Shown in pieces: positions 129-31,393 of a DNA stretch of 31,393 bases. Origin of the DNA: Macrostomum lignano (lineage: Eukaryota); contig NIVC01004920.1 of NCBI GenBank assembly GCA_002269645.1, forward strand, positions 1 to 31,393. Direction: 5' to 3'. The notes beneath the pieces are model-generated. The model saw only the letters and a list, made by a program, of their open reading frames with translations. It did no database searches and had not been told where the DNA came from. Each line of letters starts with the position of its first letter. Position 1 is the stretch's first letter. Both the position numbers and the translations under genes were made by a program.

Positions 129-922
129 CACTGTTTAGAGTGAGGGTACTGTTTAGTGAGGTCACTGTTTAGTGAGGTCACTGTTTAGTGAGGTCACTGT
201 TAGTGAAGTCACTGTTTAGTCAAGGTCACTGTTTAGTGAGGTCACTGTTTAGTGAGGTCACTGTTTAGTGAGGTCACTGTTTAGTGAGGTCACTGTTTAG
301 TGAAGTCACTGTTTAGTCAAGGTCACTGTTTAGTGAGGTCACTGTTTAGTGAGGTCACTGTTTAGTGAGGTCACTGTTTAGTGAGGTCACTGTTTAGTGA
401 AGTCACTGTTTAGTGAGGTCACTGTTTAGTGAGGTCACTATTTAGTGAGGTCACTGTTTAGTGAAGTCACTGTTTAGTCAAGGTCACTGTTTAGTGAGGT
501 CACTGTTTAGTGAGGTCACTGTTTAGTGAGGTCACTGTTTACTGGGGTCACTGTTTAGAGTGAGGTCACTGTTTAGGGAGGTCACTGTTTAAAGGGAGGT
601 AACTGTTTGAGTGAGGTCACTGTTTAGTGAGGTCACTGTTTAGTGAGGTCACTGTTTAGTGAGGTCACTATTTAGTGAGGTCACTGTTTAGTGAAGTCAC
701 TGTTTAGTGAGGTCACTGTTTAGTGAGGTCACTGTTTACTGGGGTCACTGTTTAGAGTGAGGTCACTGTTTAGGGAGGTCACTGTTTAAAGGGAGGTAAC
801 TGTTTTGAGTGAGGTCACTGTTTAGTGAGGTCACTGTTTAGTGAGGTCACTGTTTAGGGAGGTCACTGTTTAGTGAGGTCACTGTTTAGTGAGGTCACTG
901 TTTAGGGAGGTCACTGTTTAGT
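129..922. repeat. 16-bp minisatellite (GTCACTGTTTAGTGAG)n, about 49 copies
   Basis: Directly visible tandem unit with recurring variants (GAAGTC, GTCAAGGTC, GGGAGG). Confidence 0.97.
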
Positions 923-1764: not shown

Positions 1765-1890
1765 ATGGCAAAGCAAATTTTAACCAAACAGATTTTGCTT
1801 GTAGTCTTACTAAGCTTGCTGATACCCAGCAGCTGGGAAGCCCTGACACTACCTTGGAGACTACAGCTCAAACCCTTGATCCCACACTGA
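1765..1890 (+). other. Short ATG-initiated ORF encoding a signal-peptide-like N-terminus (MAKQILTKQILLVVLLSLLIPSSWEA...), out of frame with the GPCR ORF
   Basis: ATG at 1765; basic n-region, hydrophobic h-region, SSWEA c-region; stop TGA 1888-1890; one base out of phase with ORF 1854..3107. Confidence 0.55.
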
Positions 1891-3074
1891 CTCGGCCTGC
1901 TGCTGCTGCTGACTCAAATAGGCTCCTGCTCAGAGACATCAGCGGCAGCCTCGAGGTGCCGACCAGGTGCTATTCTGACTCCAGCCAGTGCCAGGTCTAC
2001 GGCGACTGCTGCCAGTCTGCGGCAGAAATCCCGGATCCCGTCTCGCACAGATCCGCCCGATTCACCTGCCTGCCAATTGAGCCGCTCAGGCCTGACGGGG
2101 AGGCGTCTGATGCGGCCCGCGCCACCGACTGCTGCCAGCTGCAGAGGCCAGCGGCTCTGGCCGTGTCTGCCTGCCCAGCCGCCTCCAGCGGCTCCATCAA
2201 CGATGCTGTCGCTGCGGCTGCAGCTGCCGCCGCCGATCCCAGAGATGTCGAAGCGTGCGGCAACTTCAACACCGATGAAGGCTTCCGCCGGTTGACTCTG
2301 TCATCGATCCCCGTGTTCGGTCCCGACGGCGTGCTGTACCGCAGCGTCCACTGTCTCCGCTGCCACCGGCCACCGCTGTCAGAACCCATCAGTCAGGACA
2401 GGTTCCTGACTAACCTGACAGTCCGCTGCCAGAATCCAGAGGATTACGTCGGCAGAAATGCCAGCGCCTGGCAGGGCGAGCTGATGCGGCTGCTGCTGAG
2501 CGGGGGCAGCCTACCCAGGCGCTGCCACCTGGCGTTCCGGGTTCAGGAGCGGCTGGTGCACCGCTGCTACGCGGGGCTGCCGCAACTGCACACAGCCGGC
2601 GGTGAGAAGTCGCCCAGCGGGGACTGCCTCACCGGCGGCACCAGCTATGCGTTCTCGGCGGCGCAGTGTCGGGTCTACCGCAATTCCGCCTGCGCCAAGG
2701 ATCCGGCCGACGGCGAGCCGCAACTCCAGCCTGACTGGCTGCGCTCCCAGTGCGCCGGCGGCAGCTCCGGAATCCTCACTCAGTCCAATCGCGAGTCGTT
2801 CAGCGTCCGGCCGAGGCCCAGCCTGTTGGACTCCGTGTTCAACTTCAATTTGGATCCGAGACTGCTGGCCGGTCAACTGGCTGCAATGTCCACCGAGTCG
2901 CCGGCTGCTGACGGTCAGCTGCGAGATAGCAAGAACGAGTCCAGTTCTGGCGACAGCCCCGGCAACGTCACGGAGGAGGCTGCGTCGGGGCGAGGAGGAC
3001 CTGCGTCGGCTGCTGGCTTGGCTGATTGGACCGACTGGGCTACAATGGCGGCTCAGGCAGCCTCGGCCGTTGCG
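1854..3074 (+). CDS. Orphan GPCR exon 1: SMB-like motif, Cys-rich ectodomain, start of TM1
   Basis: RCYSDSSQCQVYGDCC resembles the SMB core CxCDxxCxxxGDCC; two related motifs PVFGPDGVLYRSVHCLRCH and VYRNSACA; N-glycosylation sequons NLT/NAS/NVT; phase-0 donor GCG|GTTGGT at 3074/3075. True start uncertain (track start is TTG). Confidence 0.8.
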
Positions 3075-3163
3075 GTTGGTGTCACTGTGGGATCCTCATG
3101 CCCTTGAACTTCCCAGATCCCAAGCCTTTCTGCAAATGCGAGTATCCGTGCTCTGACCCAATC

Positions 3164-3314
3164 CTGTAAACTTCTGAGCAATCAGTCTGTAAACTCCTGA
3201 GAAATCAGTCTGTAAACTTCTGAGAAATCAGTCTGTAAACTTCTGAGAAATCAGTCTGTAAACTCCTGAGAAATCAGTCTGTAAACTCCTGAGAAATCAG
3301 TCTGTAACTTCTCA
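3164..3314. repeat. 23-bp tandem repeat (CTGTAAACTCCTGAGAAATCAGT), about 6.5 copies, in the GPCR intron (3075-3370)
   Basis: Directly visible. Confidence 0.95.
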
Positions 3315-3370
3315 GATCTGAAGTGCAGTGCATGTCCTGCGAACCCTACCCAATATCCTACCCAACGCAG

Positions 3371-4327
3371 GCCCTCAGCCTCACCTGCCTGTACCTGAGC
3401 CGCCGCCGTCTGCGCAATCGCTCCGGCCTCCTCTTAGTGTCGCACGCGCTCAGCCTGGCCGCGGTGAACATTCTCTCCCTCGTCGAGGCCGCCATCGCCG
3501 CGGCCTCCTCCGGCGATGTCAGCGGCTCGCCCTGGACCTGCCTGCTGGCCCTGTTCTGCATGGACGCCGGGTTCACCTGGGCTGGCCTGTTCGGCGTTGA
3601 CCTGCTGCGCACCCTCACCAACCTGCTGGCCAGGCCGTCAGCGCCATCCAGGCGCTACGCCCGGTTCGCCGCCGTCGGCTGGGGCCTCCCGGCTGTCCCC
3701 GCCGCCGTGGCCGCCGGCCTGCACTTTGGCGACAGTCCCGCCCTGTTTGACGCCAAGTCCTGCGGCCTGCCGGAGACCTCGGCAACGACGGCTGTGGCGG
3801 CGGCCTGCCGGGTTGGCCTGGCCTTCGCGCCCTGGGCCCTGGCGCTGGCCTTCAATGTCGCCTGCCTGATCGGCGTGGCCGCCTGCCTCGGACGGGCCGC
3901 CAGCCAGGCCCCGGCGTTCGAGCACCGATCGACCGGCGGTGGCCGATGGTCGAAGCGCCTCAACGGCCGGGCGCGCCGGACGCTCCGCAGGACGATGCTG
4001 ACCGCCGGCCGGGTCTCTGCAGTGCTCGGCGTGGCCTGGCTGCCCTACTGCTGCCTCATCCTGGCCGGATTCGACGACCCGGCATCCGGGGTGTACATCG
4101 CTGCCAGGCTGCTCACCGACCTGCACGGCTGCCTGCTGCTGGCGGCCTTCGCCCGGCTCAGGCACTGCCGCCGGCTGGCTACTCAGCTTAGCGGCTGCAA
4201 GTGGCGGCACAGCGCCGCAGGCTCCTCCCTGGGCTCGTCATCCAAGTCCTCCTCCGCCGCGGCCTCCAAAGGTCGAAGCACTTCCTCGACTGCGGCCGGC
4301 GTGTCGGGTGGCGCGTCATCTCGGTGA
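3371..4327 (+). CDS. Orphan GPCR exon 2: class B-like (secretin/adhesion/Methuselah-type) 7TM domain and Ser-rich tail
   Basis: Acceptor ACGCAG|GCC, phase 0, completes TM1 (QAASAVA|ALSLTCLYL); ICL1 RRLRNRSG; TM3 with top Cys and AGFTWAGLFGVD; TM4 GWGLP; ECL2 Cys; TM5 P..N; TM6 LGVAW; TM7 LHG; stop TGA 4325-4327. Confidence 0.88.
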   Translation, partial: ALSLTCLYLSRRRLRNRSGLLLVSHALSLAAVNILSLVEAAIAAASSGDVSGSPWTCLLALFCMDAGFTWAGLFGVDLLRTLTNLLARPSAPSRRYARFAAVGWGLPAVPAAVAAGLHFGDSPALFDAKSCGLPETSATTAVAAACRVGLAFAPWALALAFNVACLIGVAACLGRAASQAPAFEHRSTGGGRWSKRLNGRARRTLRRTMLTAGRVSAVLGVAWLPYCCLILAGFDDPASGVYIAARLLTDLHGCLLLAAFARLRHCRRLATQLSGCKWRHSAAGSSLGSSSKSSSAAASKGRSTSSTAAGVSGGASSR

Positions 4328-5339
4328 CTGCTAGGGAATCGTCTGAATGGTTTCTAATAGCAAAATACGTGTAATTTGCAAGACTTCTCGACAATGTGAA
4401 AATTTGAGCATGTGAAACGCTCTGGTCTATGGCAATTGAAGTGAAATTGTCGAGTTGTCTATGGCTTCTATCAAGGAGTTCTATAATTATTAGCATCTGG
4501 AGTGGAAACGAGTTTTCCACTTTTACCTCATGAGTCATGAGGCCTGGCTCCATGCGGTAAAAATTATCTAACAATTTGCGTGGCCTCGTGAGGTAAAAGT
4601 GCAAAACTTGTTTCCACCCCAGATTCTAATTATAGAACTCCTTGGCTTCTATGAATGAAGATAACCACACAACTTTCAAGCAATGACCTGCCGGGAAATT
4701 TGAGCCATAGACATTTCGAACGAATGTCAAGATTATGAATTTTAATGTTGCCAAGAGTCCCATCGACCTTTGATTTCCAAATGACCTTGGAGCACAAAAC
4801 TGAAGAGCAAATGTTTGGATTTAGACAAATGCGATACTGAATGCTCTTAGGACTTGCAATCTTGCTATTAGTATTAGTCAAGGCATCAGTCTGCTTTCAC
4901 AAGCTCGAAATCATCGCCCGAAAGTCGTTTTATTTTTTTCAAAGACATTGACGAAAAACAAGTGAAGTATGCTTCACTAGAGTTTAAACTTATGTGTACC
5001 TTTCCCAGTCACCGAGGGATCTTGATCCCACTCCTCTGTATTCATTATGGACTGAACTCCGAATCTCCTCTCCCGATGAAAACTAATGTCAGTCTAATGT
5101 CTAATGTCAGTCTGAGGCGTTAGATTGATTATCTGCGACTCTGGGGCGATAGAAGTAACTCTAAGGCCGTGGAGTCTTATCGAGTTGCTATTTCGCATTT
5201 CTAACAACTCTATTTAGCCTACTTGAGTTAGTAGAAAGTTAAGCGCCAACACGTGATGCGCTCGTTAAGAAAAAGTCACATTTAGAGTCGCCCAGAGTCA
5301 CCAGTGAGTTCACTCTTAGCGATTCTTGCCTCGGTAGTT

Positions 5340-7509
5340 TACAAATAGATCAATTAAAAAACTGGAGTTAAACAAAACACGGTCAAGCGTCAAACCGACA
5401 TTTCATATGGAGCATTTTTTAATTAATTAGCTATTTTTTGCGATGCTGTTGCAGCATCTATCAAACACACAAAACTTCTTTCAGCCGGCAGGGCGACAAG
5501 ATAATATATTTTTTCGAACTGTGGCTGGCTGGGTGGCTGGTCGAAACAAGAAGCAACACAATTAAAACACAAAACGGGCACGAGAGGCGGAGCGCTGATT
5601 AAACAAAGATTAGGTAGCGCTGGGTTCTACTAATAGTAATATAGTAATAAGTATAGGGTTTTTCGGCTATAAACTCGGTTCGATCCTCAAAAAACAATAC
5701 GCGATTACGGTGAGACAGGCGGACAGGAAAATCGATAAAAATGGGTTGCAAATTATAATTAATTATTAGATATTATATATTTCATTTATTATAGTTAATT
5801 TCCGGCCATATAGCTAACAAATATAATATTAATAATAAATATTTCTAAGCGCATAGCATATAGCATCATCATTATTGACAGGCTGGGCTGGGCTGTGGGA
5901 CTCCGGGATCTCAGTTAATATCGCTTAGTAGCATATTGTGCACGTGTTCGTTTTAATAATAATATTACTGGCAGAGAAAAAGAGTGAGAATTGAAGCTGC
6001 TAAACAATAATCAGAGCTTGAAAACATACGGCTGTGTAACTATGGTAGGCAAAGCATAATTAGCTTAGCAATCAATAATATAATAAAGAACTAAAGCTGC
6101 AGACAGTTAAATGTAAAAAGATTTCTATTGTCAGGCTGGGGGGCACTGAGGCGGGAGAGCGGCGGGGGCCAGTGGCTAACTACCAAACAAAAGCGCAATC
6201 GTTAGCAGAGACAAATTAAGACAGAAAAGAGCGCAGATGAAATCCTTTATCCATTGAATTTCGAGACGAGAAAAAACACATACTGTTAAAAAGCTAACAA
6301 AACTAATGTATAAATAGATTAGTAATACTTATTAATACACAACAGTCGCTAGACATCTGAAACCAGAAAAACCAGGTCGAGCGGAAAAGTTCAAACGAAA
6401 GTTGGTTAGGATTAAAAAAAACACTTAAAAAACGGAGCTCCAATGACCGACAAGAAGCAGCCTTCTTATCTGAGCTGGTGCGGCACTTTATATAATTAAC
6501 TATTATTATTCTAGCTAAGCCTTCGCTATGAAAAAATCATTAATAAATTTGACAGTTGGCTAGCAAAATTTCTACTAAACACCTTCATTATTAGCAAAGG
6601 GAACAGGAAAAAAATTGAAGGCGCAAAACACGCGCCAGCCTACTAGCAGTAGTTTAGCAAACAATCCGGCAGGTGTATAGAATAATGCAATTATAAAATA
6701 TTTATTGGTGCCAAATGTGAATCTTGTAAAAGTTGGGCCGCAACTGTCTTATTATTATTTTTAATGAATAAAGCCGAGTAACAGCAAACCGCGGAACAGG
6801 CAAGCAATTTTTTTGCTTTTTTTTCTGCTAACGAATAACTCTCGATAGCTGCGGCTCGGTTTGTCGGTCGTGTTCAGCGAAGTTACACTCGAAAAAGTCG
6901 ATATTAATTAAGCTAGGATTGTCTCAGAGACTGTGTAACCTGCTCCACCAGACACAGGCGCCGACGCCTTGCAGCAGAAATCAAGTTTAAAAAAATTTTA
7001 ACTTTCCATAATTTTGTCAGAAACGGACAAACAAAGTAGGCAAGGTTACAGACTCGCGTAATAATAATTAACAATATTTTTCATACTAGAAATAGAAATA
7101 TGTAGTTAAGCTCGCGGCAGATTAACTTAGAGTAACTTACAAAACATATGTAAAGATAACGGATTAAACAGCAGACTACTGTAAGTAAGTAGCATACAAA
7201 GCGGTTTATCCTTTAAATTTGCGATTTTAAACCCAACAGAGGAGGAGAAAAAGAACAGAAGCTGATGAAGCGGGTGAGAGCGAATCATCAGTGTGTGATT
7301 ATTAGTGCATTTATTGCAATGACGGCGGCTTGGTTCGCGAAAATGGCATATTATATAAAAATATAAGAGTTTTATTAATTAATTGTTAATAAATGTATTA
7401 GCATAGCATAGATTTATATGCAGAGTACAGGCCTTGCGTGTCACTGTGTCCGTACGAATTCGTTTACTCACACATGAATCAGAATTCATAATTTATTAAC
7501 TGCCAAACT
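5340..7509 (-). other. Probable long U-rich 3' UTR of beta-spectrin (distal boundary approximate)
   Basis: Follows the stop codon; A-rich on + (U-rich in the mRNA sense); candidate AATAAA on - strand at 7371-7376, 5785-5790 and 4929-4934. Confidence 0.5.
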
Positions 7510-26637
<19,128 letters not shown>

Positions 26638-28143
26638 GGCAGTTTAAACCTGCAACATTGGCCGGGTTTGCAGAGTGCCTAATGCAGAAAGCTTCAGCTT
26701 CTTAGTATGAATCTGCGCAGCACACACACAGCAAATAAGACGGCTTCTGTCACTAAGGCTGTACAAATTTGGCATTAGCTAATAGATATGTTGAAAACAT
26801 TGCAAAGCAATAGAATGTGTGTGAAATGGCCCAGATTATTACCAGTGGCTTGTTTATAGAGAATCTAGACTAGAAAAAAACGAGATAGGCTAATAATTTA
26901 ACACTGTGAACTTTGACTCATTACTATCTAACATAGCTAGCTAACCATGAAATTATGCAAAAACAAAAACAATTAGCAATACAATAACTAAAACTCGTCA
27001 CAGTTTGTTTCTAAAACTATTGTATTCTAATATCTAAGTAATAAAATAAATTATATCAATTTAGATAAATTACATCAAAGTGAATTGAAAACTAGCTATA
27101 ATTTGTATACCATAAAGATTAACATATCATGAATGTATTACTGATACTTTCAAACTTAAGCTTCATTTCAATCTAGGCAAGAATTAATAATAAACTAATA
27201 TAAAATAGGTCTTTATCATACATGCACAAAACCCAGCCAATCTGGTTGGCTAGAGAGAGGCCTAGCCAAGGTAAGTTGTAAAAATGCCCCAACAAAAAAA
27301 TAAAAGTAATACTAATTAGATGATAAGACATTTAGTTTAATTATAATATTATAATAATGGCTACTCAGATGGTTTTCAGAGGTAAATCACATTTTGGTCT
27401 AAAAGTAAGTTGCATAGCCAGTGCAAATTAGTCCAGTTGCACATTCATGGTCTTTATGGCTTTATGAACTTTAAGGCTTAGGGTTAGTTATAACTTAGTG
27501 GTTAGAGTTTGATTCTTGACCCATTTAGAACAATTTGTGGCCTTGATCAGAACACTTGACTCTGCCATTGCTTTAGTTCACTTAGCTATAAAATGGGTGA
27601 CAGCATTAGCTGAGATAATTGAGGGTGTATATAGTGACCCCCAGTCCTTAGACTGAACAGCCATATGTAGCTTTCAGATGTGCCACACAATAACTATAGC
27701 TGAGCTATTGGTTGCACATTTGCCTATTAGGGCGGATGCAATCAATTATTATATTATATTATTATTAAAATTTTAGTCAATAAAATCAATCTTTATTAAG
27801 AACCTTTCTACCTAAAAAATCCTTATTACTTGATAGATATTTATTAACCTTTTAGTTGAAGAATTTTCCAAAATACATGGAATAAATCAACCAAATCTTG
27901 AATAGGTCTCTATGTCTCTATTCAAGTTTAGGTTGATAATAAAAGCAATCTATAAAGAATCTTCCAAGTTCCAACCCTAAAGCCTAGCTATTCTTTATTC
28001 CCTAATGGTTGGCTTTAAACAATATATACTTTAGTTGAAGCTATACAAAAATGAAGCTTAAATTAAAACTAAAACTACTGAAAAGCCTTTTTTAAAATAA
28101 AATTATGATCTTATAAAAATTGCAACTAATTTATATATCAACC

Positions 28144-28475
28144 CATATATGCCCAACACCCGTCCAACCTGTCTGAACCAGATGGGTGAAATGGCCACTA
28201 GCCAAGGTAAGTCACAAATTTGAAAATGCAAAAAATGAAAAATTGGGGGAAGAAAGAAAGGAGAGAAAGAGAAAAGGAAAAGAAAGGAAGGAAAAAAGAG
28301 AGGGGAAAGATGAAAGAGAAAGAAAAGAAAAGAGAAAAAGGCAAGAAAAGTCATAAACAAAGTGAAAACTAAGTTGCAATTGGAGGAACTAAGTTGCAAT
28401 CAAGAAGAACTAAGTTGCTAATCTGGACAAACCTTGAAGTTGCACCAGATGGGTGAAATTTTGAGGTTGGGCATG
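28144..28475. mobile_element. hAT-like MITE (332 bp) with 8-bp TSD TATCAACC
   Basis: TSD at 28136-28143 and 28476-28483; termini C(ATAT)ATGCCCAAC ... GTTGGGCATG; subterminal AAGTTGC repeats; purine-rich core. An 8-bp TSD is typical of hAT. Confidence 0.7.
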
Positions 28476-28548
28476 TATCAACCTGAATTTAAAAAAGTCC
28501 ATTATCTAATAGATAGTATTACAATAGTTTGCTTAGCAGCTAGACAGC

Positions 28549-29169
28549 TATTGGCAAAATGTCTTATAGAGAAATAAGACAAAATTGAGTTGCTTAGGCA
28601 TATTTTATAGCAATATATATATAAACCAAATGAGACATTTAAACAAAATCATGTATTGCTAACTACAAGGCATAGAAGTGGAAAAATCATGTATTTAGGT
28701 GTTGCATTGGATTATAAATAGAACTATAATTTTGTCAAAATTCATGGAACTATAAACTTGGTCATCTATTAAAAATTACTAACTGCTAATGTCCAACCTA
28801 ATATAATAAAATTGAAGCTTGAATATGATTTGCTAATATAGTACAATAATAACTAAAGTATATTATAATACTAGAAAGTCTACTTAGGCATGATTAAAAT
28901 ATATATAAGCTATCTATATACTAAAAATGGTTTGTATAAGCTAAAACTAATACATTAACAAAGTCAAATCTTAGATCATAACATTATTGAAAAATTTTGG
29001 TTACATCTAAAAAAGCTATCTATATTTATAGACCTTAGAATCCAGATAAGTTAAAAAGGTTCCATATTAAAGAATAGGAAAATTCTTGCAATGATACAAT
29101 CAATTGATTGACAGTTATAGAATTCAACAACAAGCTATTATTGTGACTAAAGATTGAGTTACAAAGTAT
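28549..29169 (+). pseudogene. Fossil Tc1-family (DD34E) transposase, catalytic domain, with stops and frameshifts
   Basis: Manual translation across frameshifts: YWQNVL*RNKTK.ELLRH (WxNVLWSDETKIELFGH); KPNETF..TTRHRSGKIMYLG (PTVKHGGGSIMVWG); FVKIHGTIN..Y*KLL..NVQP..KLKL; *YNNN.KYI (QxDNDPKHT); QS..DHNIIEKFWLHLKK (QSPDLNxIExxW); KE*E; LIDSYR..QAII..K..VTKY. Confidence 0.85.
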
Positions 29170-29857
29170 TTAGCTATTGTCAAAAATTGCCAATGAACAA
29201 GTCAATAATTTGTTTACTAGTAGTTTTCTTGTTTTTGCTCAATTGTTTCTTCAACTATACAATACTTTTGCTAACAATGAAAAAATTTTGACATTATAAT
29301 GACTATCCTTATTGAATAAAACCAAAGAAAAATTACATAGGCCTATATTAAAATAAATAAATGCAATTTTTGTGAAAACTTAATTAGGATTTATATATGC
29401 ACAACTACTGGCAACCTAGCTAATCTGGCTACAATAAATTGTAGTAGACCAAGGGTAAGTTGCAAAAGTACCTATCTGAAAAATATAGATAATTGTACTA
29501 ATTAGATAATGACTCTTAATAAGGCATTTAGCCTAAAAAGACAGTCATAGTTATTCTTGCCATTTTGCCAAAATTGTATTGGTTTTTGCTATATGGTTTT
29601 TTCATAGATAAGTTGCACTTTTAATAAAAAAATAAGTAAAAGAAAAGAAAAAATGCAATTAGCCTATACCAAAGATAAGTAAAAAACTATAGTGATTTGG
29701 GCTATTGTTTTTATCTATTATTAGTCTTAGCAGATAAAACTACTTTTTTATCAAGAAATAGGAAGCAGTTCCTAGTTCTATAGTCTTAGGCTAATGGGAT
29801 TGACTTAAATAAGTTTTAAAATATTTTTTAAAGGTTGTATAAATGGTATCTTATATA

Positions 29858-30838
29858 CGAGGGGTGTCCAAAAAGTAGTGATACTTTTAACTGTAGCTCT
29901 TGTTCTATAGCTTCCTGTGATTTAAAATTTTATGAACTGATAGCGGCAAATCTCTTCTACAGACTGCTTTTTGAATTTTTAAAATTGATACCAGAGAACA
30001 AAAGTTATACCCACAAAAGTAAAAGTACCTGTACCATAGAGTTACACAAACTATATCAAAATTTATGATAGTCGACTTCTGCACTTATTCATTAAGAAGG
30101 CATCAATAAATGTCTTGTTTAAGCAATACCAAAGCCCAATTGCAAAATGATGCTCACTGTGACTGACTGAAATTTGTCTATGGACAGAATCATGTGCAGA
30201 AAAAAAAGCATTAAATTCATTACTTTACTTGCAAACAGAGGAGCTTGCATTTTGCAACTGATTTCATTGCCCATACTCGACAACACACATGGATGTGCAC
30301 TCAGTTGTTGCTCAGCAAAGTACTATCTTCACTCTTTGGGGTGCTGGCCATAGTGCCTCAGAAATTCACGCAAAACTTTGCTCTGCGCATGGATCCTCTG
30401 TGGTCAGCAAAATGACAGTTTATCGATGGATGGAACAGTTCAGCAAGGAAGGACTGACCTGGCAGATCAGCATTGGACGGGGTGGCCATACGTTCATTGA
30501 CCTGATGTACTGGCAGACTCCATTCTGAATCTTCTTGACGAGGACTCCGAATGACCATTAGAGAGATCGCTGACAGGTTGGACAAGCCGAAATCAACAAT
30601 TCATCAAAGCTTACTCGGCATGGATCTCGTGAAGCTCAGCCTATAATTTGTGTAACTCTATGATACAGGTACTGTTACTTTCATGGGTATAACTTTTGTT
30701 CTCTGGTATCAATTTTTAAAATTCAAAAAGCAGTCTGTAGAAGAGATTTGCCGCTATCAATTCATAAAATTTTAAATCACAGGAAGCTATAGAACAAGAG
30801 CTACGGTTAAAAGTATCACCACTTTTGGACACCCCTTG
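29858..30838 (+). mobile_element. Non-autonomous mariner element (981 bp), TA TSD, about 197-bp TIRs
   Basis: TA|CGAGGGGTGTCC ... GGACACCCCTTG|TA; TIRs at 29858-30055 and 30642-30838, about 94% identical by manual alignment. Confidence 0.92.
30289..30641 (+). pseudogene. Mariner transposase N-terminal (two-HTH) fragment, frameshifted, catalytic domain absent
   Basis: GHSASEIHAKLCSAHG..VSKMTVYRWMEQF (HTH1); after frameshifts and a stop, MTIREIADRLDKPKSTIH (HTH2); then runs into the right TIR. Confidence 0.85.
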
Positions 30839-31393
30839 TATTTGAAATAAGTCCTACATTATACTTTCTATAATAATAAAATATATATATATTTGTATAT
30901 TTTATAATATAATATAAAGCATAATATCAAATTTATATAACAAAATCTAAACTATATACTAAATTCTCTATAGCTATATTATATATATAAACATATAATA
31001 TATATATATATATTATTTGTCAAGGGTTAGTAAAATGGATGTACAACTCTTTACTATATCTAGATACCTAGACCCCTGCAACTAAGTCAAGTGTAAGTTA
31101 TGCCTATATTATTATTATATTTTAATATAGATCTTTAATGCATCTTTAATTCTTTAGTTTTTATATTTAACCTAAATTAAAAGTCTAATATAGACTATAT
31201 ATTTGATACATAGGCACAAAAGGGTGTAAGACCAAGACCACATATACTAAGACTGCTATACTTTAGGAGCTAAGGGAGGAATTTAGTTCAATATGTTATT
31301 AGATAGTGCTAAAAAAGATAAATATGGTAGGAAAGCCAATAGGTAGGCTGCGAGAGGTTTTCAACCAACTTTGGTAAAGTCAATAATGACGAA

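What the first reader, a model, noticed from the sequence alone, without database searches (positions are those of the whole stretch)
28549..29169. RIP-like C:G>T:A hypermutation of a fossil Tc1 transposase in an animal sequence
Seen: a decayed Tc1 catalytic domain whose length and motif order are preserved. Inferred against the generic Tc1 consensus, using only codon positions fixed by conserved residues, I count 17 C:G>T:A transitions. Examples: W TGG>TAG (28567, 29075), D GAT>AAT (28573, 28845), E GAG>AAG (28576), G GGx>AGx (28596, 28674, 28677), P CCA>CTA (28659), M ATG>ATA (28752), Q CAR>TAR (28770, 28839), D GAC>AAC (28851), H CAT>TAT (28859), T ACT>ATT (28862). Twelve of the 17 are in CpA/TpG context and only one is in CpG; both strands are hit. 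A few other changes (e.g. W>L at 28695) do not fit. Established: CpA>TpA hypermutation of repeats is the signature of fungal repeat-induced point mutation; animal TE decay is usually CpG-driven. Inference: this may reflect repeat-directed non-CpG methylation/deamination or a deaminase-based TE defence. The alternative is old age plus genome-wide AT-biased mutation.
Basis: partly seen in the sequence, partly recalled or inferred. Interest (0 to 1): 0.75.

Follow-up and report, generated by a model that had tools for sequence, protein, structure and literature searches.

The report
Decayed Tc1 transposon in CpG-free island
A dead Tc1 transposon in the flatworm Macrostomum lignano lies in a roughly 5.7 kb AT-rich transposon graveyard that has lost nearly all its CpG sites, which fits methylation-driven decay plus ordinary AT-biased mutation and not a fungal-style RIP process.

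Summary
The window is animal DNA. It matches Macrostomum lignano contig NIVC01004026.1, upstream of the beta-spectrin gene. The Tc1 fossil is real: the frame-joined translation of 28489-29169 hits only the Sleeping Beauty catalytic domain in the PDB (E=1e-8). The excess of C:G>T:A transitions is also real: 41 codons are explainable that way, against 17.6 by permutation.

The RIP-like, CpA-centred reading fails. The fossil lies in a discrete island (26742 to about 32400). Its core has 4 CpG in 3116 bp, where 65 are expected, while the flanking intergenic and intron DNA has CpG o/e of about 1. RIP indices equal the local background (TpA/ApT 1.09, substrate index 1.22, composite -0.13). Simulated CpA-targeted mutation is rejected. 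The best fit is CpG about 10x plus near-uniform non-CpG C>T.

A young mariner MITE inside the island lost 4 of 8 ancestral CpGs at about 3% other divergence. A mutation spectrum from intron minisatellites predicts an equilibrium GC of 0.26-0.30, matching the island's 0.28.

Most likely this is island-targeted CpG methylation and deamination plus ordinary AT-biased decay. M. lignano is reported to keep DNMT1 and DNMT3. An extra non-CpG component is only suggestive (P about 0.01-0.06).

The parts
26742..31393 (.). AT-rich, CpG-depleted transposon island. It starts about 100 bp upstream of the beta-spectrin start codon and runs about 1 kb past the window end.
   Evidence: GC is 0.20-0.37 per 200 bp, and the core 26742-29857 has 4 CpG against 65.3 expected. 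The extension is read from L001 (NIVC01004026.1). Normal CpG density returns at about 32700 in window-equivalent coordinates.
28489..29169 (+). Fossil Tc1-like (DD34E-type) transposase catalytic domain. Reading segments: 28489-28647, 28647-29015, 29015-29086, 29086-29169.
   Evidence: Sleeping Beauty SB100X is the only PDB hit, E=1e-8, residues 33-230. Codon table. Pfam DDE_3 was not detected.
28573..28575 (+). First catalytic Asp of the DDE triad, now AAT (Asn)
   Evidence: Aligned to the D of WSDE in SB100X.
28845..28847 (+). Second catalytic Asp, now AAT (Asn). The preceding base is C, so this is a CpG>CpA change.
   Evidence: Aligned to the first D of the DNDPKH motif.
28989..28991 (+). 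Catalytic Glu, retained as GAA. It lies 48 codons after the second Asp: 35 as in SB plus a 13-codon TA-rich insertion.
   Evidence: Aligned to the E of NPIENLW.
29857..30840 (+). Younger, internally deleted mariner-like element (MITE) inserted in the island. It has TA target duplications and roughly 200-nt terminal inverted repeats (29857-30055 and 30642-30840).
   Evidence: Inverted repeats I1 and I4, 95% complementary. Arm alignment. It holds 17 CpG against 37 expected.
30289..30640 (+). Remnant of the mariner transposase N-terminal HTH, carrying frameshifts
   Evidence: Pfam HTH_48 (Mos1 transposase HTH), E=4e-8.
28174..28459 (+). Polypurine and short-repeat segment bracketed by 19-nt direct repeats (28174-28192 and 28441-28459), lying just 5' of the Tc1 fossil
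   Evidence: Repeat families D11, D18 and D20. TRF rows at 28248-28423.
25990..26637 (-). First coding exon (CH domain) of beta-spectrin, the unmethylated-looking neighbour used as context
   Evidence: Pfam CH domain, E=6.7e-32. The queried part of this exon is 100% identical over the 60% it shares with M. lignano PAA48890.1. CpG o/e is 0.89 at 26001-26500.

Best explanation
The interval is the catalytic half of an old, dead Tc1-family DNA transposon. It sits in a roughly 5.7 kb transposon graveyard immediately upstream of the beta-spectrin gene of the flatworm Macrostomum lignano.

Shown:
- The island has been driven to about 28% GC and almost no CpG.
- The adjacent gene, its introns and the distal flank keep CpG at the expected frequency.
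- CpG sites in a young mariner MITE inside the island decay roughly ten times faster per cytosine than other C/G sites.
- CpGs in intron minisatellites of similar age do not decay faster.

Inferred mechanism: the island, but not the gene body, is methylated at CpG in the germline by the DNMT1/DNMT3 system this species is reported to retain. Spontaneous deamination of 5-methylcytosine then gives C>T on either strand. This removes CpG, produces TpG/CpA, and after a second hit produces TpA.

The Tc1 is roughly 20 times older than the MITE by non-CpG decay. It is not fungal-type RIP.
For: - Organism and locus: the queried CH-domain sequence is 100% identical, over the 60% of it that aligns, to M. 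lignano PAA48890.1. The window is co-linear with NIVC01004026.1, with 1 mismatch in the island.
- Island-specific CpG loss: 4 observed against 65.3 expected in 26742-29857 (P=3e-23). CpG o/e is 1.04 in intergenic 4500-7500, 1.10 in the distal flank and 0.64 in two spectrin intron segments. CA/TG o/e is not depleted at 1.04.
- MITE arms: 4 of 8 ancestral CpGs are lost, including a CA/TG pair at 30014-15 that marks one ancestral CG hit on opposite strands. Only 4 transitions occurred at 116 other C/G sites.
- Intron arrays lost 20 of 153 CpGs at the same non-CpG divergence (Fisher P=0.018).
- Simulations: CpG-only mutation cannot reach GC 0.28. CpA-dominated models are rejected. CpG x10 plus near-uniform non-CpG, with CpA at most 2-3x, fits best.
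- The baseline spectrum from 11 intron arrays gives GC>AT/AT>GC = 2.4-2.9 and an equilibrium GC of 0.26-0.30, which equals the island's GC.
- Literature: M. lignano retains DNMT1 and DNMT3 and has low overall 5mC. The genomic pattern is undescribed (PMC11292947, PMC9246332, PMC10658182).
Against: - No methylation data for this locus were available, so 5mC is inferred from mutation patterns only.
- At 53 family-conserved Tc1 columns, G/C-fixed sites were lost about 6 times more often than A/T-fixed sites (22/53 against 46/53 retained, P=1.8e-6). The array baseline is about 2. After allowing for CpG, the excess remains at P of about 0.01-0.06. Some additional non-CpG C>T pressure is therefore not excluded.
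- CpA-type sites were hit in 11 of 16 cases against 10 of 26 for CpC-type sites (P=0.11).
- The ancestor was approximated by a fish Tc1 (SB100X), and the conserved columns were chosen from my memory of Tc1 motifs.
- The MITE sample is tiny (8 CpGs).
- Minisatellite variants are an imperfect proxy for the neutral spectrum, because of array homogenisation.
- This is one locus only.
Confidence: 0.6

Rival explanations
1. A broader repeat- or island-directed cytosine hypermutation acts at non-CpG sites as well as CpG sites, with CpG far above CpA and CpA at or above CpT/CpC. It could work through CpH methylation by DNMT3, DNMT-catalysed deamination, or an AID/APOBEC-like DNA deaminase. That would be RIP-like in logic though not in sequence context.
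For: - G/C against A/T loss asymmetry of about 6:1 at conserved Tc1 columns, against about 2:1 in the local baseline. It is still P of about 0.01-0.06 after a CpG correction.
- CpA-type sites mutated in 69% of cases against 38% for CpC-type sites.
- Models with a 2-3x CpA preference fit as well as or better than uniform models for two of three ancestor proxies.
- The left boundary of the island is sharp, under 300 bp.
Against: - The CpA against CpC difference is not significant (P=0.11 over all columns, 0.42 over conserved columns).
- Island RIP indices equal the background.
- The island's GC equals the equilibrium of the baseline spectrum, so no extra process is required.
- There is no strand bias or clustering of the kind single-strand deaminases leave.
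- The MITE arms show only 4 non-CpG transitions in 116 C/G sites, with no CpA bias.
Confidence: 0.15
2. Age plus genome-wide AT-biased mutation only. The island is simply the oldest unconstrained DNA in the locus. Its CpG loss is a relic of an earlier period of genome-wide methylation or of another non-targeted cause, and the CpG-normal neighbours are younger or constrained.
For: - The baseline spectrum predicts GC 0.26-0.30.
- C:G>T:A is already the largest class in the baseline, at 34-41% of changes.
- Much of the intron DNA consists of young minisatellites.
Against: - The young MITE lost half of its CpGs after inserting, at only about 3% other divergence. Intron arrays of similar divergence did not. 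CpG hypermutability is therefore recent and local.
- Non-array intergenic DNA at 4500-7500 (38% GC, no ORFs of 60 aa or more in 4900-7500) keeps CpG o/e at 1.04.
Confidence: 0.15
3. The AT-rich, CpG-poor state is largely ancestral to the elements (an AT-rich Tc1 lineage, or decay before arrival). On this view many 'mutations' inferred against a GC-richer fish consensus never happened here.
For: - The MITE's roughly 200-nt arms are 29% GC yet 95% identical to each other, so an element can be natively AT-rich.
- SB100X is a distant proxy: 51 of 196 residues are identical.
Against: - There are 16 in-frame stops, several at W (TGG>TAG/TAA) and Q codons.
- Both catalytic Asp codons now read AAT.
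- G/C-specific loss appears at residues invariant across the family. These cannot be features of a functional ancestor.
Confidence: 0.08

Closest known systems
Methylation-driven CpG decay of transposable elements (as in vertebrate Alu/L1 and plant TEs, and the TE methylation seen in some invertebrates)
   Same: Near-complete loss of CpG, with CpG o/e of about 0.06. TpG/CpA are not depleted. Both strands are affected. CpG hypermutability is roughly ten-fold. The effect is confined to repeats. DNMT1 and DNMT3 are reported in the species.
   Different: Here the adjacent gene body and introns look unmethylated (CpG o/e of about 1). Most invertebrates show the opposite, with gene-body methylation. 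5mC at the locus was not measured.
Fungal repeat-induced point mutation (Neurospora-type RIP)
   Same: C:G>T:A transitions on both strands. Stop codons are created in a transposase. An AT-rich block with a sharp boundary sits next to normal genes.
   Different: RIP prefers CpA, which raises TpA/ApT and depletes CpA+TpG. Here the indices are 1.09 and 1.22, the same as background, and CpG rather than CpA is eliminated. Dependence on duplication could not be tested. No RID-type enzyme is known in animals (own knowledge).
Basidiomycete RIP-like hypermutation at CpG-containing targets (Horns et al. 2012, PMC3318451)
   Same: C>T hypermutation of TEs centred on CpG-containing sites rather than on CpA.
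   Different: That pattern is specific to TpCpG (from my memory of the paper) and occurs in fungi. Here every CpG is gone whatever its 5' base, and a gradual rate model explains both the old and the young element.
APOBEC/AID-type editing of retroelements in vertebrates
   Same: An enzyme-driven C>T/G>A load on mobile elements.
   Different: That editing is strand-coordinated, acting on cDNA, with TpC/CpC or WRC context (own knowledge). Here the element is a cut-and-paste DNA transposon, both strands are equally hit, and CpG is the main target.

Membership tests
Tc1/mariner superfamily, Tc1-like (DD34E) transposase | Sequence homology to the DDE catalytic domain | tested here: met
   Sleeping Beauty SB100X is the only PDB hit, E=1e-8, covering chain residues 33-230. 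Pfam DDE_3 was not detected, because the copy is too decayed.
Tc1/mariner superfamily, Tc1-like (DD34E) transposase | D, D, E triad in order with Tc1 spacing | tested here: met
   D>N at 28573, D>N at 28845, E retained at 28989. The D-D distance is 272 nt, against 91 codons in SB. The D-E distance is 48 codons, which is 35 plus a 13-codon insertion.
Tc1/mariner superfamily, Tc1-like (DD34E) transposase | Terminal inverted repeats with TA target duplication, and an N-terminal paired-like DNA-binding domain | tested here: inconclusive
   Only a weak 22-nt inverted pair was found (28500-28521 with 29490-29511, 77%). No N-terminal domain was recognisable by eye in 27250-28500.
Fungal RIP | CpA>TpA bias: high TpA/ApT, low (CpA+TpG)/(ApC+GpT), positive composite index | tested here: not met
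   Island values are 1.09, 1.22 and -0.13. The finding interval gives 1.01, 1.29 and -0.28. Background is 0.94-1.06 and 1.04-1.37. CpA-dominated simulations are rejected.
Fungal RIP | Acts only on duplicated sequence | not testable with these tools
   No other copies of the family could be fetched. The only extra locus is the same locus. An R/Y-coded self-comparison found no hidden duplicates within the island.
Fungal RIP | Almost exclusively C:G>T:A transitions | tested here: inconclusive
   At conserved columns there were 21 such transitions, 10 G/C transversions and 7 A/T changes. That is an enrichment (55% against 34-41% in the baseline), but the changes are not exclusive.
Methylation-driven CpG decay of TEs | Strong CpG deficit without CpA/TpG deficit, limited to the repeat region | tested here: met
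   CpG o/e is 0.06-0.08 in the island, against 1.04-1.10 in the flanking intergenic DNA and 0.64 in two intron segments. CA/TG o/e is 1.04.
Methylation-driven CpG decay of TEs | CpG transitions several-fold faster than other C/G transitions in the same element | tested here: met
   MITE arms lost 4 of 8 CpGs, against 4 transitions at 116 other C/G sites. Intron arrays lost 20 of 153. The sample is small.
Methylation-driven CpG decay of TEs | DNMT1/DNMT3 present, and 5mC present at the locus | not testable with these tools
   The presence of DNMT1 and DNMT3 and low global 5mC is taken from reviews citing Wasik et al. 2015. The primary paper is not held. No methylome data were accessible.
AID/APOBEC-type DNA editing | Strand-coordinated mutation with a TpC, CpC or WRC 5' context | tested here: not met
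   G>A at 16 of 41 sites and C>T at 5 of 12 (P=1.0). TC/GA o/e is mildly low at 0.79, against 0.85-0.99 in background, which is not diagnostic.

The most novel reading that the evidence does not exclude
Macrostomum lignano has an active, repeat- or island-directed cytosine-to-thymine mutagenic defence. It would be mediated by a DNMT or a deaminase, hit CpG most strongly and non-CpG cytosines to a lesser degree, and be paired with a TE-only methylome that spares gene bodies. That would be a functional analogue of fungal RIP/MIP in a bilaterian.
Probability: 0.1. Interest if true: 0.8.

Novelty: new member of a known kind. Interest (0 to 1): 0.3.

Why it matters
If the inference holds, this locus is sequence-level evidence that a free-living flatworm methylates transposon islands rather than gene bodies. 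That differs from the usual invertebrate pattern. [quoted passage not shown]

It also gives a cheap genome-wide predictor of methylated regions in this regeneration model: CpG-free, roughly 28% GC islands. As a claim of RIP in animals it does not stand. Decay of methylated repeats at CpG is well known elsewhere.

Tried and rejected
- Fetching other copies of the Tc1 or mariner families for a consensus failed.
  - The spectrin-repeat exon gave one weak hit.
  - The CH domain identified the species.
  - The mariner HTH query found nothing.
- L001 was hoped to be a paralogue that would give polarised differences. It is the same locus, with 1 mismatch in the island.
- An R/Y-coded (transition-blind) self-comparison of the island found only the polypurine tract and the MITE arms.
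- Pfam did not recognise the Tc1 fossil.
- ORF lists for the flanks showed no obvious TE ORFs.
- A three-copy alignment of a ~110-nt repeated stretch (aligned windows starting 27215, 28150, 29400) was only 66% identical, too diverged to polarise changes.
- I considered and rejected a fungal origin, which the sharp AT/GC boundary had suggested. The spectrin and GPCR genes and the M. lignano match rule it out.
- The primary paper on M. lignano methylation (Wasik et al. 2015) is not held.

Full report
**What the window is**

The minus strand carries a beta-spectrin gene. Its CH-domain exon lies at 25990-26637, with spectrin-repeat exons down to about 8000. A 7tm_2-type receptor gene lies at 1854-4327.

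The CH-domain query is 100% identical, over the 60% of it that aligns, to Macrostomum lignano protein PAA48890.1. The window is co-linear with contig NIVC01004026.1 of assembly GCA_002269645.1, fetched as L001. So this is an animal sequence, from a free-living flatworm.

L001 is the same locus, with 1 mismatch across the AT-rich block. It extends the sequence 4.9 kb beyond the window end.

**The observation**

A Tc1 catalytic-domain remnant is present.
- Joining four reading segments (28489-28647, 28647-29015, 29015-29086, 29086-29169) gives a 228-codon pseudo-protein with 16 stops.
- Its only hit among 177,635 PDB sequences is the Sleeping Beauty SB100X catalytic domain, E=1e-8. The alignment runs from chain residue 33 to the C-terminal TKY.
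- An earlier, shorter hand-joined version covering the first 112 residues already gave E=0.003. Pfam did not detect it.
- The catalytic D, D and E map to 28573 (AAT), 28845 (AAT) and 28989 (GAA). The spacing is Tc1-like apart from a 39-nt TA-rich insertion.

- Eleven of the 15 listed coordinates came out directly as C:G>T:A transitions in my alignment.
- 28596 is out of frame, because GGC is retained at 28597.
- 28770 aligns to a variable position.

**Is there a C:G>T:A excess?**

Yes. Of 145 codons that differ from SB100X, 41 can be derived from a codon of the SB residue by C>T or G>A alone. Permuting the SB residues among those positions gives 17.6 +/- 3.7 (P<0.0005). The other classes:

| Class | Observed | Expected by permutation |
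|---|---|---|
| GC>AT transversions | 24 | 22.0 |
| AT>GC transitions | 3 | 2.7 |
| A<>T / C<>G transversions | 37 | 35.1 |
| AT>GC transversions | 12 | 4.7 |

At 53 columns that I regard as conserved across Tc1 transposases (chosen from memory), amino-acid-fixed sites fared as follows:

| Site type | Retained | Transitions | Transversions |
|---|---|---|---|
| G/C-fixed | 22 | 21 | 10 |
| A/T-fixed | 46 | 2 | 5 |

The Fisher test gives P=1.8e-6. Both strands are hit alike: G>A at 16 of 41 sites and C>T at 5 of 12.

**Is the context RIP-like?**

No.
- The finding interval has no CpG where 9.4 are expected.
- With within-codon ancestral contexts, the inferred transitions split CpA 10, CpG 8, CpC 6, CpT 6 and unknown 20. 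The 'CpA' majority (27 of 50) appears only when present-day neighbours are used.
- Three SB Arg positions now read TAT and two read CAA, as expected if CGN was hit on one or both strands. No CGN survives.
- Per site at risk, CpA-type positions were mutated in 11 of 16 cases and CpC-type in 10 of 26. The difference is not significant (P=0.11; P=0.42 on conserved columns).
- For the island without the MITE, TpA/ApT is 1.09 and (CpA+TpG)/(ApC+GpT) is 1.22, so the composite index is -0.13. Neighbouring non-coding DNA gives 0.94-1.06 and 1.04-1.37. From my knowledge of the standard RIP criteria, these values fail all three indices.

**What is actually unusual**

The fossil lies in a discrete island.
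- GC falls from 0.55 to below 0.3 within about 300 bp at 26650-26950.
- From 26742 to 29857 there are 4 CpGs, against 65.3 expected (P=3e-23).
- The island continues past the window end to about 32400, with small CpG-bearing patches. Normal CpG density then returns.
- In contrast, CpG o/e is 1.04 in the intergenic DNA at 4500-7500 (38% GC), 1.10 in the distal flank, 0.64 in two intron segments and about 0.9 in exons.
- A high GpC o/e (1.3-2.0) is shared by the island and most of the flanking non-coding DNA, the distal flank excepted (1.09). It is therefore not an island feature.

**A young element dates the process**

A mariner-like MITE sits inside the island at 29857-30840. It has TA duplications, roughly 200-nt inverted arms and an HTH_48 remnant at E=4e-8.
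- Its arms differ at 10 positions within the repeat.
- Four ancestral CpGs times two arms give 8 CpG sites, and 4 of these are lost. One is a CA against TG pair at 30014-15, which marks a single ancestral CG deaminated on opposite strands.
- Only 4 transitions occurred at 116 other C/G sites.
- Per cytosine this is roughly ten-fold CpG hypermutability.

**A local baseline**

I used variants against the consensus unit in 11 intron and intergenic minisatellite arrays of the same window (5.9 kb) as a polarised mutation sample.
- In the arrays, CpG transitions are about 2x non-CpG by occurrence (20 of 306 against 76 of 2490). They are not elevated when counted as distinct events.
- There is no CpA preference: CpA 2.8%, CpC 3.5%, CpT 3.0%.
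- CpG loss is 20 of 153 in the arrays against 4 of 8 in the MITE at similar non-CpG divergence (P=0.018).
- The spectrum is AT-biased, with GC>AT/AT>GC = 2.4-2.9. That gives an equilibrium GC of 0.26-0.30, which matches the island's 0.28.

**Simulations**

I started from three local ancestor proxies and applied C>T on both strands until GC reached 0.283.
- CpG-only mutation stalls at GC 0.36-0.50.
- A Neurospora-like CpA model predicts CpG o/e of 1.4-2.3, CA/TG of 0.07-0.34 and TpA/ApT of 1.4-1.6. The observed values are 0.08, 1.04 and 1.09.
- Equal CpG and CpA targeting is also rejected.
- The best fits are CpG x10 with uniform or mildly CpA-biased (2-3x at most) non-CpG mutation.

**Interpretation**

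The simplest model is one gradual process, with k(CpG) about 10 times k(other C). It explains both elements:
- the MITE, with half of its CpGs gone at about 3% other change;
- the Tc1, with all CpGs gone and about half of its other G/C sites changed, making it roughly 20-fold older.

CpG-specific hypermutability confined to the island is most simply explained by germline 5mC. M. lignano is reported to retain DNMT1 and DNMT3 and to have low global 5mC of undescribed distribution (PMC11292947, PMC9246332, PMC10658182).

The non-CpG transitions are largely what the local AT-biased spectrum predicts. There is a residual: G/C sites in the Tc1 were lost about 6 times as often as A/T sites, against about 2 in the baseline. 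After allowing 20% of the sites to be CpG, this gives P of about 0.01-0.06, depending on the assumed ratio. I regard this as suggestive only. It rests on a distant proxy ancestor, on hand-picked columns and on an imperfect baseline.

**Limits**

This is one locus. There are no methylation data and no family consensus. All three word-indexed protein searches are spent, and the mariner query found nothing. The MITE sample is small.

**Verdict**

The fossil and the C:G>T:A excess are real. The RIP-like CpA reading is not supported. The notable feature is an island-limited loss of CpG next to a CpG-normal gene, which points to TE-island methylation in this flatworm.

Noticed in passing
window 29857-30840: Mariner-like MITE with roughly 200-nt terminal inverted repeats (95% identical), TA target duplications and an internal Mos1-type HTH remnant. 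The arms are 29% GC while the interior is 43% GC, so the arms were AT-rich before insertion.
   Followed up: partly
window 129-922, 8573-9441, 11108-11616, 13337-13781, 14653-14978, 17035-17533, 18270-18843, 19825-20576, 22388-23223, 25585-25987: The spectrin introns and the flanks are packed with minisatellite arrays (periods 13-107 nt, 5-49 copies). Several of them create long spurious ORFs. I used them as a local mutation-spectrum baseline.
   Followed up: partly
window 28174-28459: A 19-nt direct repeat (TGMACCAGATGGGTGAAAT) brackets a polypurine tract and 2.7 copies of AACTAAGTTGCAAT-type units just 5' of the Tc1 fossil. It may be an insertion or a slippage duplication that replaced the transposase N-terminal half.
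   Followed up: no
aligned windows 27215-27345, 28150-28262, 29400-29530 (45-60-nt core starting 27262, 28198, 29448): Three direct-orientation copies of a ~110-nt repeated stretch containing CTAGCCAAGGTAAGTTGCAAAA (66% mean identity). They may be ends of an unidentified short element.
   Followed up: partly
window 5501-7500 and the island: GpC o/e of 1.3-2.0 in AT-rich non-coding DNA both inside and outside the island. This looks like a property of the local non-coding DNA and has no explanation so far.
   Followed up: no
window 1854-4327 (+): Two long ORFs at 65-74% GC. The second has a weak secretin-family 7TM match (E=9e-8). Together they probably form a GPCR gene with a Cys-rich ectodomain that Pfam does not recognise.
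   Followed up: no
window 25585-25987 against L001 10393-11087: Nearly all substitutions between the window and NIVC01004026.1 lie outside the island, and the two alignment blocks overlap at the 32-nt minisatellite just downstream of the first spectrin exon, which matches at many alternative registers. The two sequences also differ by many short gaps. These are probably differences between assemblies or haplotypes.
   Followed up: partly
L001 extension, window-equivalent 31657-31736 and 32024-32086: Small clusters of 5-6 CpGs sit inside the otherwise CpG-free island. They may be younger insertions or protected sites.
   Followed up: no
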